DNA of 63,878 bases, the filler included, from Octopus bimaculoides (Eukaryota): NCBI RefSeq assembly GCF_001194135.2. It is 5 parts of 5 records of this genome, joined end to end, with 100 filler letters (N's around TTAATTAATTAA, not from the genome) between each part and the next. Parts side by side here need not be neighbours in the genome. Positions count along the whole stretch, not along the records: positions 30,174 to 58,131 come from NC_068982.1; 4 more parts are not named here. One strand, written 5' to 3'. The notes beneath the pieces are model-generated. The model ran no database searches, had not been told where the DNA came from, and saw only the letters and a program-made list of their open reading frames with translations. Below, piece after piece: positions 6,161 through 50,420 of the stretch; positions within the stretch are counted from its first letter, which is position 1, and the number at the start of each line of letters is the position of its first letter. A program made the position numbers and the translations under genes.

Positions 6161-7804
6161 ATCAATGCTTTAACATAATTGNNNNNNNNNNNNNNNNNNN
6201 NNNNNNNNNNNNNNNNNNNNNNNNNNNNNNNNNNNNNNNNNNNNNNNNNNNNNNNNNNNNNNNNNNNNNNNNNNNNNNNNNNNNNNNNNNNNNNNNNNNN
6301 NNNNNNNNNNNNNNNNNNNNNNNNNNNNNNNNNNNNNNNNNNNNNNNNNNNNNNNNNNNNNNNNNNNNNNNNNNNNNNNNNNNNNNNNNNNNNNNNNNNN
6401 NNNNNNNNNNNNNNNNNNNNNNNNNNNNNNNNNNNNNNNNNNNNNNNNNNNNNNNNNNNNNNNNNNNNNNNNNNNNNNNNNNNNNNNNNNNNNNNNNNNN
6501 NNNNNNNNNNNNNNNNNNNNNNNNNNNNNNNNNNNNNNNNNNNNNNNNNNNNNNNNNNNNNNNNNNNNNNNNNNNNNNNNNNNNNNNNNNNNNNNNNNNN
6601 NCCCCAACCCCAACCCACCACTACCACACAAAATTTCAGGCCTGGTGCCTATAGTACATAGAATTCTGTCTGAATCACAGCATACAAACATAATGAAGCT
6701 GTTCGAAATATATGCTACTGCTACAGAGAATTGTGAAAACAGTTGCTTCATTAGACAGCGAATTTAATTCTATCAAAGAGACGTCCAGAACCTCCTATGT
6801 AGATTTTTCAAATGCTGTACGTTTCCTTTCGATTCGAGGTTCAACCCTCTATTTGTCATTTTAGTCTCCTCTGCATTGATGGAACCGAAGTAAGTAAAAC
6901 AATGACGAAGTCTTCAGAGCTTTTCTATTAACTGAAAGTGATACTAGAATCAAGTACGTGATTATTCGCCGACGTTACCGTGGGAGGTCAAATCTAACTC
7001 ACAACGAAATAAATAGAATACAATATTATTGGTCTCTCTTTCTCCGTCTCTCCGTCTCTCTCTTTGTCTTCCCACTCTGTTTATCTCTGTCTGTCTGTCA
7101 GTCTCTCTCTGTCTCTATTTGTCTGTGTGTCGGTCTCTGTCTGTCTGTCTGTTTGCATCTCTCTCTCTCTCTCCATATATATATATATATGCACGTATGT
7201 ATATATCGCAGTACTTATTGATATTTCAGAACAGGTATTGATTATGAAAAGCACAAGGAAAGCTTCCATTGGTCACTTCAGTACAATTTGCCACAAGACA
7301 GATATGAAAATCTAAAGGTACTTTTCCTTGTATTTATCGATGAATGCTTATATATATATNNNNNNNNNNNNNNNNNNNNNNNNNNNNNNNNNNNNNNNNN
7401 NNNNNNNNNNNNNNNNNNNNNNNNNNNNNNNNNNNNNNNNNNNNNNNNNNNNNNNNNNNNNNNNNNNNNNNNNNNNNNNNNNNNNNNNNNNNNNNNNNNN
7501 NNNNNNNNNNNNNNNNNNNNNNNNNNNNNNNNNNNNNNNNNNNNNNNNNNNNNNNNNNNNNNNNNNNNNNNNNNNNNNNNNNNNNNNNNNNNNNNNNNNN
7601 NNNNNNNNNNNNNNNNNNNNNNNNNNNNNNNNNNNNNNNNNNNNNNNNNNNNNNNNNNNNNNNNNNNNNNNNNNNNNNNNNNNNNNNNNNNNNNNNNNNN
7701 NNNNNNNNNNNNNNNNNNNNNNNNNNNNNNNNNNNNNNNNNNNNNNNNNNNNNNNNNNNNNNNNNNNNNNNNNNNNNNNNNNNNNNNNNNNNNNNNNNNN
7801 NNNN

Positions 7805-7842
<38 letters not shown>

Positions 7843-8578
7843 GCATACATATATTTATATGTATGTATGTATGTACAAGAGAATTAAATGCTTACAATAG
7901 AATTAAATGTTTACAATAGAGCTAAATGTTTATAATACAATTAACTGATTGACATTGAATTACAAAAGATAACAACAACAGTAATTGTATTTAGCAGAGT
8001 TCACTTTCGATTTTCATTTTGCAAACCCTAACTTTGAAATATATGTAGCGAAAAGAAGCAGTAGTGATACCACAAGGCAATATTCATCTCAACTTAAATT
8101 TGAACGTTGTGTTGGAACACAAAATACTGCGTTAAGTACCACAAGAGAACATCTGCTATGGACTTGAGGTGCATATAAGTACTCGTGTTTATATCGCTAG
8201 CGGGTGATAATCGTCCGCTACCACCACCGGAACTGTCGAATCATGTCATTTCGGCGTTAGTGAACCTAGAACAATGTGGTTGGGAAGCAAACTTCTTACC
8301 ACACAGCCACACCTGACAGAAAAAAAGAATAACTTGGACGGAGTGGTACATACGTAAATTATTTGTTCACAAAACGAGTGAAGGGTGTTTTAGTCTTGCT
8401 TTACTTTATGATCCATCCATAAGATAGCAGCAGTATTACCTAACCTTCTAGCATTCAAATTGGCTATATCTACTCAAGTATTCTAGCTGTTTTAGGTTCA
8501 AACTGACCAGATCCAGCCTCTCGCACCTACCCTATAATGTCATTCTAGAAATATACAATCACATAAACAAAATCTTAA

Positions 8579-8799
8579 CCCTTTTGATAACAACCCGGCT
8601 GAAACAGCCTCTGGCTCTGTAGTACAAATGTCTTGTTTTCAAAAGTTCTGAATTAAAATATTCCACCAAACCTTAGTCACAATTTATGTTCCTAACACTA
8701 GTTTAATGATAACTAAGTTATTTTACTAAATTCTTTGTTATATTTAAAATAATTGAAAGAAACGCAGAACATCTCAAAATAAATACAGTAACGAAAGGG
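8579..8799. mobile_element. piggyBac-like MITE
   Basis: TTAA|CCCTTTTGATA...TAACGAAAGGG|TTAA: TTAA TSDs at 8575-8578 and 8800-8803 with CCCTTT termini. Confidence 0.75.
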
Positions 8800-8904
8800 T
8801 TAAAGCTACCAGATAATGCATGATTACTTCAATACAATGTGAATAGATAAACGTTATATTTAACAGAATAACCTGAAAGCTAAAAGGTTAACATTTTCTT
8901 TCTA

Positions 8905-9103
8905 CTTTAGGCACAAATCCTGAAATTTTGTAGGGAAGAGGTAAATCGATTACATCGATCCTAGTGTTCAACTGGTATCTATTCTATTGACCCCGAGGGT
9001 ATGAAGGGCAAAGTCGATCTCGGCGGAATTTGAACGTAAAACTAGAAGAAATGCCACTAAGCAATCTGTCCTACGCGCTAACGACCCTGCCAGCTCGCTG
9101 CCT
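8905..9103 (-). mobile_element. tRNA-derived SINE, family A
   Basis: Reverse-complement match to GGCGGCGAGCTGGCAGAAACGTTAGC..GAGTTCAAATTCCGCCGAGGTCGACTTTGCCTTTCATCCTTTCGGGGTCGAT. Confidence 0.85.
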
Positions 9104-9124
9104 ATTTCTACCTTAATATTGGCT

Positions 9125-9319
9125 TTAAAGTTTGGCACAAGGTCAGCAATTTCAGGGCTGGAGCTAAGTCGAGTACAATGACCTCCAGTACTCAGCTGGT
9201 ACTTATTTTGTCGACCCCGAAAGGATGAAAGGCAAAGTCGACTTCGACGGAATTTGAACTCAGAGCGTAAAGCTGGCAGAAATGCCTGGTGCGGTAACGA
9301 TTCTGCCTGCTTGCCGTCT
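9125..9319 (-). mobile_element. SINE family A
   Basis: Plus strand GACCCCGAAAGGATGAAAGGCAAAGTCGACTTCGACGGAATTTGAACTCAG is the reverse complement of the family core. Confidence 0.85.
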
Positions 9320-9335
9320 TATTATTACTACCTTA

Positions 9336-9530
9336 ATACGTTAGCACAGACAAAATGCTTAGCGGCATTTCCTCCGTTTTATGTACTGAGCTCAAATTCC
9401 GCCGAGGTCGACTTTGCCCTCCATCCTTTCGGGGTCAACAAATTAAATACCAGTGAAGCTCTGGGGTAGATATAATCGACTAGTCCCTTCCCACCAAATT
9501 TCAGGCCTTCTACCTTTATGAGAAGGGGTT
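9336..9530 (+). mobile_element. SINE family A
   Basis: ACGTTAGCAC..AAATGCTTAGCGGCATTTC..CAAATTCCGCCGAGGTCGACTTTGCCCTCCATCCTTTCGGGGTC. Confidence 0.85.
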
Positions 9531-9543
9531 ATATACTGAAAAT

Positions 9544-9637
9544 AAGGTGGCTAGCTGGCAGAATCGTTAGCACGACGGACAAAATACTTAGTAGCGTTTC
9601 TTACGGCTTTACGTTCTGAGTTCAAATCCCGCCAAGG
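9544..9637 (+). mobile_element. SINE family A, head only
   Basis: GGTGGCTAGCTGGCAGAATCGTTAGCAC..GTTCTGAGTTCAAATCCCGCC. Confidence 0.8.
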
Positions 9638-9739
9638 ATTTCACATATATACACATAGACGCAATAATTCAGAGTTGACGCCTCTATCAAAGTTGAGGTC
9701 TCTCTCTCTCTGTCTATCCTGGATTTCACCTTACAAATA

Positions 9740-9990
9740 TACGTGTCTTCTATTCCACTTTGTCGTCTATTTTTAAGTTCTTGAATAGTGCGTCCAGTTT
9801 CTTTTAGCAATGGTTGATGAGGCGTTTCTGCGGGTTTACTTATTACCGGTTTACCATGAAAAAGCTTGCCACAGCAAATCTGCATCTACTACCTCCTCTT
9901 TGTTACGCCAACTGTGACCAATGAATCTCAGCTTGTGCTTTCGTATTGTCCCTGTGATATACAAGATGTCTTGGTATGGCTCTGTGTTAG
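9740..9990 (-). mobile_element. RTE-clade LINE, degenerate C-terminal fragment
   Basis: Two frames give ITGTIRKHKLRFIGHSWRNKEEVVDADLLWQ and FHGKPVISKPAETPHQPLLKETGRTIQELKN, resembling the RTE RLRFAGHCWR..LLW..GRP..TY motif. Confidence 0.7.
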
Positions 9991-10005
9991 TTTTGTATTG
10001 AAATA

Positions 10006-10412
10006 TGCGTAGGTGTGGGTGTGTGCTTCTCAACCACATAGTTCCCAGTTAAGTTCCACTGCGTGACACCTTGGACAAGTGTCTTTTACTATAGCCTCGG
10101 GCCAACCAGAGTCTTGTGAATGAATTTGGTAGACGGAAGCTGACAGAAACCCGTCGCATATATATATTTATATATGTGTGTGCGTGTGTGAGTGTGTGTG
10201 TGTGTGTATGTGTGTGTTTGTGTGTGTATTTGTCCACCACCACCGCTTGACAACCAGTATTAGTGTGTTTACAGCTCCATAACGTAGCGGTTCGGCAAAA
10301 GATCTCGATATGATAAATACCAGACTTTAAAAAAAAAATACTGGACTAAAAATTAATCAAGGCGGTACCTCAGAATGGTCGCAGCCTAATGACGGAAACA
10401 AGTATAAAAGAT
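10006..10412 (+). mobile_element. SINE family B, diverged full length
   Basis: CACCTTGGACAAGTGTCTTTTACTATAGCCTCGGGCCAACC..CGCTTGACAACC..GCGGTTCGGCAAAA..GGCGGTACCTCAGAATGG. Confidence 0.85.
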
Positions 10413-10469
10413 ACCATGAAATGTTCAGAACAACATGGAACATTCTGGTGTAAGTACAGTTTAGCGTAT

Positions 10470-10910
10470 TCTTCACGGGAGCTGAAACAATAGCGAGCAA
10501 TATCTCCCTCATTTTCACCTCTATGGATAAAATCAAAGATTGTGAAATCTATGTAAAATAGAGAAGCTAGTATATTCCACTCATTTACATCTTCAAAGAT
10601 GTAATTATTTGCCCCATTGTTGATCTATATGGAAGAAAGTCGTTCTGAATTTCTGTGAAGAATTTTCTCTCGTTTGAGCTTGATATTTTTCGGTGACATC
10701 GGATTTTAGATTTTAGCAGCAATTGCATTAATTGTCAAGCTACGGTAGTTCTTCGTATAATCTAGGTCTTCTGGTTTTGTGTATTGGTATTACAGAACTT
10801 CCTCCTCAATATCTGCTTTTCTTTGCTGGTATTGCAGGCCTCTAGGTGCAAAATGTTAAATTCTTCTACTTTCCAGACCTCTTCAGTGACAACATCCAGC
10901 ATGTAAGCTT
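10470..10910 (-). mobile_element. RTE-clade LINE reverse transcriptase fragment (degenerate)
   Basis: Minus-strand translation LDVVTEEVWKVEEFNILHLEAC..KNYRSLTINAIAAKI..QNDFLPYRSTMGQI..LFYIDFTIFDFIHR covers RT domains 1-3. Confidence 0.75.
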
Positions 10911-33129: not shown

Positions 33130-34287
33130 ACCAACATTTTGCTCCATCCCTAACTGATGTCACTCAGACCCAAAGCAAATAGCTGCCTAGATGACCGAAG
33201 GAACAACATACCTTCTACCAAAAACTGAAAGCACGAAAATCCAAAGAACTACCGACCAATTAAACGCCTCGACACCACCTACAAGATCCTCACGTCCATA
33301 CTAACTGAAAGAATATACACTTTCCTGGAACAGAACTCTATTCTTCCACAAGCTCAAAGAGGTTGTAAAAGGAATTCTCAGGGATACAAAGATCAATTAC
33401 TCATAAATAAAATGATTGTAGAGAATTGCCGGAGCAAAAAGAACCTGAGTATGGCATGGATAGACTACAGGAAAGCGTTTGATAGTGTCCCACATAATTG
33501 GCTACTCAAGGCCCTTGAGATATACAAGATCTCTCCTGTAGTCTCCAAATTCTTCCAAGATAGCATGGCCAAGTGGAATACATGTCTTTTCCAACACCAT
33601 AGTAATGGGATGAGCTAATCTAACAACATCAACATCAAAAGAGGCATCTTTCAAGGTGACCCCCTCTCCCCATTACTCTTTTGCATGGCACTGATCCCAC
33701 TCTCAAACGAACAGAGTAACACCAAGTATGGGTTCAAAATGCATAATGTTATAGTAAATCATGTTTTATGTGGACGATCGGAAGCTGTTTGCTAGAAATG
33801 ACGAAGAGTTCAGCAATGATATAGCGATGGATTTTGGTCTTGACTTAATAAGTGTGCTAAAGCAATTTTTGTGAGAGAAAAGCTCTGGCAAACAGCTTCC
33901 GTTAAATTAGACACCGACACTACCATCAAGGAGCTTAACCCGCAAGGATGCTATAAATACCTGGGGATAAACGAAGGAGACGGTATACAACATACTACTA
34001 TGAAAGAAAAAGTACGAAAGGAACATTACAGAAGAATACGACACATACTAAAAATTGACCTCAACTTCAAAAATTGTCGCATCGAAGCCATTATCACCCT
34101 GGCACTTCTAGAAGTCCAATACAGTTTTAACATAATTAACTGGAATCTTACAGAACTCCAACGCCTGGACAAGATGACAAGAAAACTGCTAACATCTAAG
34201 AACATGCACCACCCAAAAGCAGATGCTGATCGTCTGTACCTACTTAGAAGTAATGGGGGAAGAGGAATGATGCAGGTAGAACAGACC
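33130..34287 (+). mobile_element. R4/Dong-like (RLE-group) non-LTR retrotransposon RT, 5'- and 3'-truncated pseudogene
   Basis: TEGTTYLLPK..PKNYRPI..TTYKILTSI..QRGCKR..KDQLLINK..NLSMAWIDYRKAFDSVPHNWL..IKRGIFQGDPLSPLLFC..YKYLGI..HPKADADRLYL..GGRGMMQVEQ. Confidence 0.88.
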
Positions 34288-35206
34288 CGTTTCAATCACA
34301 TCAACATTGACTTAGTCGGTCCCTACCATCTTCACAGGGGTGCTCGTACCTACTGACCTTGGTAGACCGATACGCTCGTTGTCCTGAGACTATCTCTCTC
34401 TGCAGCACGGAAACACAAGTCAGCCGAGCCTTCATCACAAACTGAATTGCCCGATTCGGTGTCTCAAACAGCACATCACCCAATCGGGCTCCACAATTCA
34501 CCCCAAAGCTGTGGAATGACATATGTGACCTTTTGGGAATCACAATGAAGCGCACAATAGCCTAACATCCACAGGCCAACGGGTTAGTGGAGAGATTTCA
34601 CCGCTGCCTGAAGGAGTCCTTGACAACCAGACTTAACAGGGCCAATTGGATTGATCAACTTCCATGGGAGATGTTGGGAATCTGTACCGCCCCGGAACAA
34701 TTTCTCAACACTTCTTCCACAGAAATGGTGTATGGTGCCCCTCTTGCAGTGCTAGGAGAGTTCCTTCTGAACACAAAGTCAGACCCAGATGTCAAAAGAT
34801 ATCTCGCGCAACTGAGAGACAGTGTGGGCCAGTTGCGCCCTATTCCCATGTCAACACCCGGGACACCTAGATCATCCGTGCCAATGATCTCTGCACGGCT
34901 AAGTTCGTGTTCATTTGACGTGGCACACTACGAAAACCCCTCCAGTCACCCTACTTTGGCCCATATGAAGTCCTATGTCCGGGAGACAAATCGTTCAAAC
35001 TCCGAATTGCCGGACGACAAGACACAGTTTCCATCGATAGGTTGAAACCAGCCCATCTCGATATTGACAGCCCCATCCAATTAGCTCAGCCACCAAACAG
35101 AGGCCGTCCCAAGCAAATCACACCAACCTTTGGCAAGGAGCAATCACCAAAGAGCCGAGTAACCACACGCAGGAGCAGGGCAATTAAAACGCCTTCCCGG
35201 TTCTAA
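34288..35206 (+). mobile_element. Gypsy (Ty3) LTR retrotransposon integrase with GPY/F module, degenerate
   Basis: RFNHINIDLVGP..LTLVDRY..IARFG..HPQANGLVERFHRCLK..WIDQLPW..PLQSPYFGPYEVL..VSIDRLKPAHL, with stop at 35204-35206. Confidence 0.92.
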
Positions 35207-35223
35207 TGACAGTCAACAGTTCT

Positions 35224-35233
35224 GGTGAGGAGC
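35224..35233 (+). other. Polypurine tract (PPT) of the Gypsy element
   Basis: GGTGAGGAG directly upstream of TGTA at 35238, the canonical PPT/3'LTR position. Confidence 0.6.
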
Positions 35234-35237
35234 TATA

Positions 35238-35545
35238 TGTAGGGCACTCCCCAAGGATTTACGAACTATAGACAAGAACTTCGCTGCAGGCTAGCTAGGG
35301 AGCTGGTCTGCAGCAAAGTAGACTACCGGTTAAGCGGACTTCTACGATGTAAGAGTTGACAGTCGGCTGTCGCCCTCATGTGTTTAATTAAATATATGAG
35401 GGCGACAGCCGCTAGTCAACCCCCTGCTTCGTAGAGGTCTGCTTAATCGGAAGTCTACTTCGCTACAGACTAGCTCCCTAGCTAGCCTGCAGCAAAGTTC
35501 CTATCTACAGTTCGTCTGTCATAAATCCTTGAGTAGTGCCCTTCT
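35238..35545. mobile_element. ~308-bp self-complementary sequence in the 3'-LTR position (palindromic LTR or fold-back MITE)
   Basis: The left arm TGTAGGGCAC..GGCTGTCGCCCTCATGTGTTTAA pairs with the right arm TTAAATATATGAGGGCGACAGCC..GTGCCCTTCT, with no spacer (centre 35387/35388). Confidence 0.85.
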
Positions 35546-35589: not shown

Positions 35590-35760
35590 CACAAGGGCGA
35601 TCAAAATGTCTTACAGTAATTAGTTACGTCCCCTTAAGTTCTCAGTTCAAATCTCGCTGGAGTCGACTCTTCAGCAATCGATGAAATTAAATACCAGCCA
35701 AATACTGGCTTAGTTTAATCAAATGTTGTCTTCTCTAAAAAGTGGGGCTGTGTACCCCCG
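35590..35760 (+). mobile_element. SINE family A, old copy
   Basis: GTTCTCAGTTCAAATCTCGCTGGAGTCGACT..TCGATGAAATTAAATACCAG. Confidence 0.6.
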
Positions 35761-44396: not shown

Positions 44397-44532
44397 TATA
44401 TATNNNNNNNNNNNNNNNNNNNNNNNNNNNNNNNNNNNNNNNNNNNNNNNNNNNNNNNNNNNNNNNNNNNNNNNNNNNNNNNNNNNNNNNNNNNNNNNNN
44501 NNNNNNNNNNNNNNNNNNNNNNNNNNNNNNNN

Positions 44533-48493: not shown

Positions 48494-48630
48494 NNNNNNN
48501 NNNNNNNNNNNNNNNNNNNNNNNNNNNNNNNNNNNNNNNNNNNNNNNNNNNNNNNNNNNNNNNNNNNNNNNNNNNNNNNNNNNNNNNNNNNNNNNNNTAT
48601 ATATATACACACACACACACATACATATGC

Positions 48631-50311: not shown

Positions 50312-50420
50312 CATGCATATATATATATATATATATATATATACANNNNNNNNNNNNNNNNNNNNNNNNNNNNNNNNNNNNNNNNNNNNNNNNNNNNNNN
50401 NNNNNNNNTATATATATGCA

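What the first reader, a model, noticed from the sequence alone, without database searches (positions are those of the whole stretch)
35221..35545. Gypsy element whose apparent 3' LTR is one ~308-bp spacer-less palindrome
Seen in the sequence: the integrase stop (35204-35206) is followed by a PPT (GGTGAGGAG) and then TGTAGGGCAC at 35238. From there to 35545 the sequence folds back on itself around TTTAA|TTAAA with no spacer. The arms of ~150 bp differ mainly by transitions and a 7-nt indel, so this is old real DNA and not a read-level artefact. The end GTGCCCTTCT is a decayed inverse of the start TGTAGGGCAC. Established: LTRs normally carry only short terminal inverted repeats (TG..CA). Inference: this may be an LTR retrotransposon family with fully self-complementary LTRs. 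Such LTRs would give an orientation-symmetric promoter, a built-in long dsRNA (an ADAR or siRNA substrate in an animal with heavy A-to-I editing), and solo LTRs that look like MITEs. The alternative is a fold-back MITE that inserted exactly at the PPT/LTR boundary.
Basis: partly seen in the sequence, partly recalled or inferred. Interest (0 to 1): 0.8.

Follow-up and report, generated by a model that had tools for sequence, protein, structure and literature searches.

The report
Inverted duplication of a Gypsy LTR
The 300-bp palindrome is real, but it is a one-off, old fold-back duplication of the first two thirds of an ordinary LTR at the end of a dead, truncated octopus Gypsy fragment, not a new kind of LTR and not a MITE.

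Summary
Arms 35241-35387 and 35388-35542 meet at TTTAA|TTAAA with no spacer. They differ by 22 substitutions (17 transitions) plus 1-nt and 7-nt indels, and the DNA fold scores z = -18.

The interpretation does not hold. The window is Octopus bimaculoides. Eight LTRs of the same integrase family, from three Octopus species and one Logan read assembly, all start TGTAGGG just after a purine tract. All match the left arm, and all continue as ordinary non-palindromic LTRs of about 225-265 bp. One O. vulgaris copy has two direct, 94% identical LTRs flanked by ATGG.

So the left arm is nt 1 to ~150 of a normal 3' LTR, the right arm is its inverted copy, and LTR nt ~151-225 are missing. Because relatives without a right arm carry the left-arm sequence, a MITE insertion is excluded. 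The right arm keeps a 7-nt ancestral stretch that the left arm lost, so the duplication is old and not an artefact.

The element is a 5'-truncated integrase pseudogene fused to a LINE RT fragment. Best mechanism (inferred): a strand switch at the TTAA/TTAATTAA mini-palindrome, probably at the cDNA stage, because the right arm ends within 3 nt of the start of polypurine-tract (PPT)-primed plus-strand DNA. Interest is low.

The parts
33220..34281 (+). Fragment of a non-LTR (LINE) reverse transcriptase, truncated at both ends and degenerate. It directly abuts the Gypsy fragment.
   Evidence: tblastn with P0203 aa 22-384: 48% identity, E 7e-104. No LINE C-terminal part is found anywhere downstream in the piece. 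Pfam RVT_1 3e-17.
34288..35206 (+). Ty3/Gypsy-type integrase pseudogene, 5'-truncated. It starts at RFNHINIDLVGP, about residue 63 of a full integrase. Frameshifts lie near 34323 and 34900, with in-frame stops at 34443, 34563 and 34916. The TAA at 35204 is CAA in relatives.
   Evidence: Three-frame translation. Pfam rve 1e-5, below the gathering score. 719 homologues at E<=1e-10, many with Integrase_H2C2 + rve + RT_RNaseH. tblastn with P0002.
35224..35232 (+). Polypurine tract GGTGAGGAG, 5 nt upstream of the LTR start.
   Evidence: A purine-rich run sits at the same place in every 3' copy of the family (alignment A2).
35238..35387 (+). Left arm: nt 1 to ~150 of an ordinary 3' LTR (TGTAGGGCAC...). 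Complementarity to the right arm begins at 35241. It carries a private 7-nt deletion.
   Evidence: Homologous to the LTRs of L001, L002, L005, L006, L007 and L003. LTR nt 1 is defined by 5' copies whose upstream flank differs (L002_up, L007_up).
35384..35391 (.). TTAATTAA mini-palindrome at the symmetry centre (35387|35388). It aligns with the AATAAA/TAAGAATA region of related LTRs and is the inferred strand-switch point.
   Evidence: Sequence. Alignment A2 columns about 240-250. L003 reads GATTAACTAAG at this point and then continues as a normal LTR.
35388..35542 (-). Right arm: inverted copy of LTR nt ~150 down to nt 4. It keeps the ancestral ATGACAG that the left arm lost. The last 3 nt of the LTR terminus are not represented.
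   Evidence: A2 columns 64-70. Polarised substitutions: 8 left-derived, 14 right-derived.

Best explanation
WHAT IT IS (about 0.85). This is a private, old rearrangement, not a designed feature. The 3' LTR of a dead Octopus bimaculoides Ty3/Gypsy fragment is present only as its first ~150 nt. It is followed at once by an inverted copy of those same nucleotides, and the normal last ~75 nt of the LTR are absent. Since the event both arms have decayed independently (about 15% mismatches, K2P about 0.17). The locus is now inert sequence that can merely form a long hairpin if transcribed.

HOW IT AROSE (inferred, about 0.4 for this version). During plus-strand DNA synthesis primed at the polypurine tract, the nascent strand (LTR nt 1 to ~150) stopped at the AT-rich, self-complementary TTAA/TTAATTAA motif. 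It re-annealed through that motif to a plus-sense template, either the co-packaged RNA or another plus strand, and was extended in the opposite direction. That extension copied U3 back to nt 1, then the PPT and the integrase region. The bottom strand of the window then reads as one cDNA, 5'->3': sense LTR 4-150, antisense LTR 150-1, antisense PPT, antisense integrase. It may then have switched template to a LINE RNA, which would give the fused LINE RT fragment. The resulting linear fragment was patched into a chromosome break by end joining rather than by integrase.

This version accounts for five things at once: the absence of a spacer, the turn at a mini-palindrome, the missing LTR 3' third, the 5'-truncated integrase, and the right arm ending within 3 nt of the position where PPT-primed DNA begins.
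For: Shown:
- The palindrome is real and far beyond chance.
- The left arm is the start of the family LTR. Homology to seven LTR copies in L001/L002/L005/L006/L007, and to L003/L004, runs from the integrase through the PPT into the arm.
- Those LTRs are ordinary. No inverted repeats are found, and they continue 70-110 nt past the centre-equivalent point to a shared end ...ATAGCTTAAC(T)AAAGCTATA.
- L007 has two direct LTRs, 16 differences in 262 nt, flanked by ATGG.
- L003/L004, which share the arms' 8-nt insertion and 37-nt deletion and are thus the nearest lineage, also have an ordinary LTR.
- The right arm retains the ancestral ATGACAG that the left arm deleted, and both arms carry derived substitutions (8 and 14). 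So the arms are old and independent, not an artefact.
- Arm complementarity ends at LTR nt 4, with extension score 0 beyond it.
- The right flank holds no LTR remainder and no integrase.
- The centre is a perfect TTTAATTAAA. L003 has TTAACTAA at the same place, one base from a palindrome.
- The element is truncated at about integrase residue 63 and is fused in the same orientation to a LINE RT fragment that lacks both ends. At most CAG-level microhomology is seen at the junction.

Precedent from papers:
- Ty1 cDNA replication intermediates are captured by NHEJ at breaks, with the 3' LTR as a hotspot (PMC11372161).
- Plus-strand synthesis can be prematurely disrupted, and aberrant strand transfers occur in retroviral reverse transcription (PMC12657518).
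Against: - This is a single locus, and no reverse-transcription intermediate can be observed.
- The turn sits at the poly(A)-signal-like hexamer, not at any canonical stop of plus-strand synthesis.
- The terminal 3 nt do not match, so the right-arm end is 'near' rather than 'at' LTR nt 1.
- The LINE/integrase junction could equally come from a later genomic deletion.
- No copy more than 82% identical in DNA to this element could be retrieved. The native sequence of this exact sublineage at the turn (TTAATTAA or TTAACTAA) is therefore inferred.
- Chromosomal fold-back repair can also make inverted duplications of up to about 150 bp (PMC11724301).
Confidence: 0.75

Rival explanations
1. Post-integration chromosomal fold-back. 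A normal 3' LTR suffered a break or a stalled fork near nt 150. The 3' end snapped back on the TTAA/TTAATTAA microhomology, a cellular polymerase copied about 150 nt of the same strand, and the new strand was joined to the other end, with loss of the remaining LTR.
For: The layout fits: no spacer, and a turn at a short self-complementary motif. Fold-back inversions of 2 to about 150 bp primed at inverted microhomology and finished by NHEJ are documented in yeast (PMC11724301).
Against: Two extra coincidences are needed. Synthesis would have to stop within 3 nt of LTR nt 1. The other break end would have to lose at least the remaining ~75 nt of the LTR, of which the flank holds no trace. Most documented events are under 14 bp.
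Confidence: 0.22
2. Two LTRs in opposite orientation. A second insertion, a solo LTR, or the element's own 5' LTR after an inversion lay tail-to-tail with the 3' LTR. Because TTAATTAA reads the same on both strands, a microhomology-mediated deletion or inversion between the two copies of that site joined nt 150 to nt 150.
For: This explains why the right arm ends at the LTR's outer terminus next to unrelated DNA, and why the join is spacer-less at a palindromic 8-mer. The arms need not have been identical at the start.
Against: An integrase-made end should read ...CCCTACA. The window has ...CCCTTCT, which needs two transversions in 3 nt where the arms show only 5 transversions in 147 nt. No second integrase, LTR remainder or reciprocal palindrome of LTR 151-225 is found anywhere in the piece. 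The model needs two same-lineage insertions side by side, or an inversion across 8 bp of homology.
Confidence: 0.15
3. One reading: this sublineage of the family has fully self-complementary LTRs as its normal state.
For: A palindromic LTR would automatically end TG...CA. No copy more than 82% identical to this element could be fetched, so the exact sublineage is sampled only once.
Against: None of the 8 related LTRs is palindromic, including the nearest lineage L003/L004. The palindrome lacks the LTR's conserved 3' third, which is shared by all other copies. The outer end of the right arm is not the expected ...ACA. No second copy lies in the 28-kb piece or in 120 kb of other Octopus loci.
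Confidence: 0.05
4. A fold-back MITE or TIR element inserted exactly at the PPT/LTR boundary.
For: The terminal inverted repeats look MITE-like, and the size is typical.
Against: The left arm is the LTR itself. Relatives without any right arm carry the same sequence directly after the PPT. No target-site duplication flanks it: CTATATGT on the left, TCTGTTAG on the right.
Confidence: 0.02
5. Assembly or read artefact: a chimeric fold-back read, or a mis-join of two LTR copies.
For: Spacer-less palindromes are a classic artefact of amplification and of some long-read libraries. I could not check reads.
Against: The arms differ at 22 sites and two indels, each arm has its own derived changes, and the right arm keeps ancestral bases missing from the left. 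A fold-back read would give identical arms. The nearest assembly gap is 8.8 kb away.
Confidence: 0.03

Closest known systems
Ordinary Ty3/Gypsy (Metaviridae) LTR retrotransposon of Octopus, as seen in L007 (O. vulgaris OX597815.1) and L001 (O. bimaculoides CM046615.1)
   Same: The integrase C-terminus is 79-83% identical in DNA. The purine tract and the LTR start TGTAGGG are the same. The conserved U3 stem-loop (ACTTCGCTGC...GCAGCGAAAG) is shared.
   Different: Those copies have a direct, non-palindromic LTR of about 262 bp (about 225 bp in the L003 lineage). The window has only nt 1 to ~150 plus their mirror image, with no 5' LTR, gag or RT.
Fold-back (snap-back) templated inverted insertions at DNA breaks (PMC11724301)
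   Same: An inverted copy sits directly next to its template. The turn is at a short inverted microhomology. The size lies at the upper end of the reported range (about 150 bp).
   Different: Reported events are mostly 5-34 bp and end at arbitrary points. Here the copy ends at the LTR terminus, and the sequence beyond the turn is lost.
Capture of LTR-retrotransposon cDNA intermediates at chromosome breaks (yeast Ty1; PMC11372161 and the 1996 Teng/Gabriel and Moore/Haber papers cited from memory)
   Same: A truncated fragment is rich in 3' LTR sequence, lacks integrase hallmarks, and has one end near a replication-intermediate terminus.
   Different: Those are experimental events in yeast. No palindromic LTR product is described in the text I read. 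Here the case is a germline fossil in a cephalopod, inferred from structure only.
DIRS-type retroelements and Penelope-like elements, which carry inverted terminal repeats
   Same: They are retroelements that carry inverted rather than direct terminal repeats (from memory).
   Different: DIRS elements use a tyrosine recombinase, and their inverted repeats lie at opposite ends of the element. Here there is a DDE integrase (rve), and the inverted repeat is a single fold-back at one end. This element is not a member.
Foldback/MITE DNA transposons
   Same: A hairpin-forming sequence of about 300 bp with long inverted arms.
   Different: It has no target duplication and no independent copies, and one arm is demonstrably part of the retroelement LTR.

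Membership tests
Ty3/Gypsy LTR retrotransposon | pol with RNase H followed by an H2C2 zinc finger and a DDE integrase core | tested here: met
   The window fragment matches rve (E 1e-5, below Pfam's cut-off because it is decayed). It has 719 homologues at E<=1e-10. Homologues P0042 and P0086 show RT_RNaseH, then Integrase_H2C2, then rve, in that order. The window itself lacks everything upstream of integrase residue ~63.
Ty3/Gypsy LTR retrotransposon | Two direct LTRs flanking the internal region, with a short target-site duplication | tested here: not met
   Relatives meet it: L007 LTRs at about 7577-7838 and 10509-10770 are 94% identical and flanked by ATGG. The window copy has no 5' LTR and only a rearranged part of the 3' LTR. 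It is a fragment of a member, not an intact member.
Ty3/Gypsy LTR retrotransposon | Polypurine tract immediately upstream of the 3' LTR | tested here: met
   GGTGAGGAG at 35224-35232. A purine run is conserved at this position in all 3' copies.
Ty3/Gypsy LTR retrotransposon | Primer-binding site after the 5' LTR | not tested
   The 5' end is absent from the window. The sequence after the L007 5' LTR (ACTGATAACCTCGACG) was not analysed against tRNAs.
   None of the 8 related LTRs is palindromic. The limit is that only about 120 kb of other Octopus sequence was reachable, and no copy was more than 82% identical.
Fold-back MITE / TIR element | Target-site duplication flanking the terminal inverted repeats | tested here: not met
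   The flanks CTATATGT and TCTGTTAG share no duplication.
Fold-back MITE / TIR element | The element is separable from the host sequence, with independent copies elsewhere | tested here: not met
   The left arm is the LTR of relatives that lack the right arm. No other copy lies in the piece or in seven loci. A whole-genome search was not possible.
Fold-back / snap-back inverted duplication | An inverted copy contiguous with its template, with the turn at short self-complementary microhomology | tested here: met
   Spacer of 0 nt. The centre is TTTAA|TTAAA, with TTAATTAA at 35384-35391.
Captured retroelement cDNA intermediate | A fragment end coincides with a terminus of a reverse-transcription intermediate, with no integrase signature | tested here: inconclusive
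   The right arm ends at LTR nt 4, within 3 nt of the PPT-primed plus-strand start. Only one such end is available, and no empty site was available for comparison.
DIRS-like retroelements | Tyrosine recombinase instead of a DDE integrase | tested here: not met
   The adjacent ORF is an rve-type integrase.

The most novel reading that the evidence does not exclude
This sublineage of the octopus Gypsy family, sampled here only once, may really use a self-complementary LTR. In that case U3 would be mirrored around an ATTAAA poly(A) signal, R would be a hairpin, and solo LTRs would look like MITEs. The ordinary LTRs I found would then belong to sister lineages. The evidence against is strong but indirect, because no copy more than 82% identical could be fetched.
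Probability: 0.05. Interest if true: 0.7.

Novelty: new member of a known kind. Interest (0 to 1): 0.2.

Why it matters
As it stands, this is one decayed rearranged repeat in microsatellite-rich non-coding DNA. It has no sign of function, and it removes an attractive but unsupported idea (palindromic LTRs as a built-in dsRNA source).

It has modest value as a worked example. A spacer-less palindrome at the end of an LTR element can be dated and polarised with relatives. Its geometry, with the outer end at the plus-strand start and the turn at a mini-palindrome, points to an aberrant reverse-transcription product fixed in an animal germline. If genome-wide searches found more such 'half-LTR hairpins' ending at LTR nt 1, they would be a natural record of strand-switch errors of retrotransposon reverse transcriptases. 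They would also be a small source of hairpin RNAs.

Tried and rejected
- **Other copies in the piece.** I searched 30174-58131 for a second copy of either arm or of the LTR remainder, and for a reciprocal palindrome of LTR nt 151-225. Nothing was found.
- **Does the LINE resume after 35545?** That would have made the Gypsy block a clean insertion. tblastn with C-terminal parts of full-length LINE homologues found nothing.
- **Exact-protein look-ups.** Look-ups of window ORF 34587-35045 and of P0001 and P0124, meant to reach other assemblies or same-subfamily loci, found nothing on record. The cluster listing gave no contigs.
- **Translated palindrome as query.** A protein search with the translated palindrome, meant to catch ORFs called on other LTR copies, gave no candidate.
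- **Rfam and tRNA scans of the piece.** Nothing was found. The tRNA-like look of 35640-35680 was not confirmed.
- **BEL/Pao reading.** My first impression, from the DRLKPAH motif, was a BEL/Pao element. I dropped this because homologues carry Integrase_H2C2 and RT_RNaseH, the Gypsy-type domains.
- **Extension of the palindrome into the PPT.** An apparent AGTTC/CTA match turned out to be an alignment artefact (score 0).
- **Autointegration and L1-type twin priming.** I considered both on paper and rejected them. Neither yields a mirror image of the same LTR segment with the RNA 3' side at the centre.

Full report
**1. The observation**

The repeat finder reports three collinear inverted pairs. 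Together they make one palindrome, 35241-35387 / 35388-35542, with 0 nt between the innermost arms. BLAST of the region on itself gives a single reverse hit of 310 columns at 80.6%, E 6e-80. As single-stranded DNA it folds at -119 kcal/mol against -40.7 +/- 4.4 for shuffles, z = -18.

Aligned from the centre outward, the arms differ by 22 substitutions (17 transitions, 5 transversions), a 1-nt indel and a 7-nt indel. Complementarity stops sharply at 35241/35542, and an anchored extension scores 0. The TGT at 35238-35240 therefore has no partner in the TCT at 35543-35545. The nearest assembly gap is 8.8 kb away.

**2. Origin of the sequence and what lies upstream**

The integrase fragment retrieves UniProt A0A0L8HXS1 of Octopus bimaculoides at 93% identity. 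That gene model is spliced across this very locus. The 'Gypsy element' is only a fragment:
- It starts at 34288 (RFNHINIDLVGP, about residue 63 of a full integrase).
- It changes frame near 34323 and near 34900.
- It has in-frame stops at 34443, 34563 and 34916.
- It ends at TAA 35204, which is CAA in relatives whose stop is the next codon.

Homologues carry RT_RNaseH, Integrase_H2C2 and rve in that order, so the Ty3/Gypsy assignment is sound.

Immediately upstream, 33220-34281 is a LINE reverse-transcriptase fragment in the same orientation, truncated at both ends. The junction shows at most CAG-level microhomology. The LINE does not resume anywhere downstream.

**3. Relatives**

Exact-protein look-ups gave seven loci:
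- L001 and L005: O. bimaculoides CM046615.1
- L002: O. sinensis
- L006 and L007: O. vulgaris
- L003 and L004: Logan assemblies SRR11869391 and SRR11869394

In all of them the DNA homology to the window (73-83%) runs from the integrase through the purine tract into the left arm.

The multiple alignment (A2) shows three things:
- The LTR starts at TGTAGGG. Two upstream copies with unrelated left flanks (L002_up, L007_up) begin exactly there.
- The window's two arms both align to LTR nt 1/4 to ~150.
- Every relative continues for another 70-110 nt (...GTAAAGTAATAAACCTTT...ATAGCTTAACAAAGCTATA) to a shared LTR end.

None of these loci has an inverted repeat at its LTR. L007 carries a complete, internally deleted element. 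Its LTRs lie at about 7577-7838 and 10509-10770. They are direct, differ at 16 of 262 positions, and are flanked by ATGG on both sides. L003/L004 share with the window's arms an 8-nt insertion after TGTAGGG and a 37-nt deletion. They are therefore the nearest lineage available, and their LTR is also ordinary. Where the window turns back (GTTTAA|TTAAAT), L003 reads GATTAACTAAGAATACTTTTACTGAC....

**4.

The left arm is retroelement LTR. It is not a foreign insert, because relatives with no right arm have it. The MITE idea therefore fails, and there is no target duplication either.

What is special here is confined to this locus. LTR nt 1 to ~150 is followed by its own mirror image, and the last third of the LTR is missing. 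The right flank holds no trace of that last third.

**5. Age and authenticity**

The 7-nt indel is a deletion in the left arm. The right arm, like all relatives, still has ATGACAG (A2 columns 64-70). Polarising the arm differences with the relatives gives 8 left-derived, 14 right-derived and 3 ambiguous changes. Both arms have therefore decayed independently from a common sequence. K2P is about 0.17, roughly three times the LTR-LTR divergence of the L007 element. This rules out a fold-back read artefact and shows there has been no arm-to-arm gene conversion.

**6. Mechanism (inferred)**

Any model must explain five facts:
- (a) There is no spacer.
- (b) The turn lies at a perfect TTTAATTAAA, where the nearest relative has TTAACTAA.
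- (c) LTR nt ~151-225 are lost.
- (d) The right arm ends at LTR nt 4, next to unrelated DNA.
- (e) A 5'-truncated integrase is fused to a LINE fragment.

*Preferred reading (about 0.4).* Read on the bottom strand, 5'->3', the block is: sense LTR 4-150, antisense LTR 150-1, antisense PPT, antisense integrase, antisense LINE RT. That is what one expects if a prematurely stopped, PPT-primed plus-strand DNA re-annealed through the self-complementary TTAA/TTAATTAA to a plus-sense template. It would then have been extended as a minus strand, later switching to a LINE RNA. The linear product would have been patched into a break by end joining. Capture of Ty1 replication intermediates at breaks, with the 3' LTR as a hotspot, is documented (PMC11372161). 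Premature or aberrant plus-strand events are documented for retroviral reverse transcription (PMC12657518).

*Rival 1 (about 0.22).* A chromosomal fold-back at a break within an integrated LTR. Such events reach about 150 bp in yeast (PMC11724301). This model leaves (c) and (d) as coincidences.

*Rival 2 (about 0.15).* Two oppositely oriented LTRs joined by deletion or inversion across the palindromic 8-mer. This explains (d). However, it predicts a canonical ...CCCTACA end, which is not seen, and other remnants, which are not found.

*Remaining rivals.* The family-level palindromic LTR (about 0.05), a MITE (about 0.02) and an artefact (about 0.03) are residual.

**7. Comparison with known things, and verdict**

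The locus is a fragment of an ordinary octopus Ty3/Gypsy element. It is not an intact member, because it has no 5' LTR and its 3' LTR is rearranged. The rearrangement works like known fold-back or snap-back inverted duplications. It is not DIRS-like, because it has a DDE integrase, and it is not a foldback transposon.

Nothing indicates function. The neighbourhood is microsatellite-rich non-coding DNA with no RNA-family or tRNA hits. Whether the hairpin is transcribed, diced or edited cannot be tested here.

Interest is low (0.2). The novelty class is a new instance of a known kind of event. The main limit of this work is that the octopus genome could not be searched by DNA. The exact sublineage is thus represented only by this copy, and by two protein read-throughs (P0122, P0124) that share its LTR start.

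Noticed in passing
window 33220-34290: A LINE reverse-transcriptase fragment, truncated at both ends, is fused head-to-tail and in the same orientation to the truncated Gypsy integrase. At most about 3 nt (CAG) of microhomology is seen. UniProt A0A0L8HXS1 ('Integrase catalytic domain-containing protein') is a gene model spliced across these two dead transposon fragments and is almost certainly spurious.
   Followed up: partly
window 35278-35319 and its mirror 35457-35498; alignment A2 columns ~86-130: A stem-loop of about 42 nt lies inside U3: ACTTCGCTGCAG, then a loop with GCTAGCTAGG, then CTGCAGCAAAGT. It is conserved in all LTR copies of the family across three Octopus species. It explains why repeat finder also reports the arms as a direct repeat. 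It could be a regulatory or dimerisation element. Covariation was not tested.
   Followed up: partly
L007 ~7577-10770 (O. vulgaris OX597815.1): A complete but internally deleted element of about 3.2 kb. It has two direct LTRs of about 262 bp (94% identical) flanked by ATGG, and integrase from about residue 62 onward. It may be a non-autonomous derivative. L002 (O. sinensis) has a similar LTR-to-LTR spacing of about 3.1 kb and might be the orthologous insertion or a copy of the same deleted form.
   Followed up: partly
L001, L005, L006, L007 and the window (integrase start points): Most sampled copies of this integrase family are 5'-truncated within the integrase, at about residues 62, 63, 73, 145 and 161. 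L002 still reaches residue 1. Three of the truncation points cluster at residues 62-73. I cannot tell whether that is chance or a shared deletion-prone site.
   Followed up: no
window 35204-35209: The TAA that ends the integrase here is CAA (Gln) in relatives. The family's own stop is the TGA one codon later.
   Followed up: yes
window 30174-58131 in general: The piece is microsatellite-rich ((TG)n, (ATGT)n-like, (GA)n, (AAT)n) with 36% G+C. It has three assembly gaps (44404-44532, 48494-48597, 50346-50408) and no convincing host exon. All long ORFs are repeat translations.
   Followed up: partly
window 35600-35700: The stretch GTTCTCAGTTCAAATCTCGCTGGAGTCGAC looks like a tRNA T-arm or SINE head, but ARAGORN and Rfam report nothing. 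It may be a decayed SINE.
   Followed up: partly
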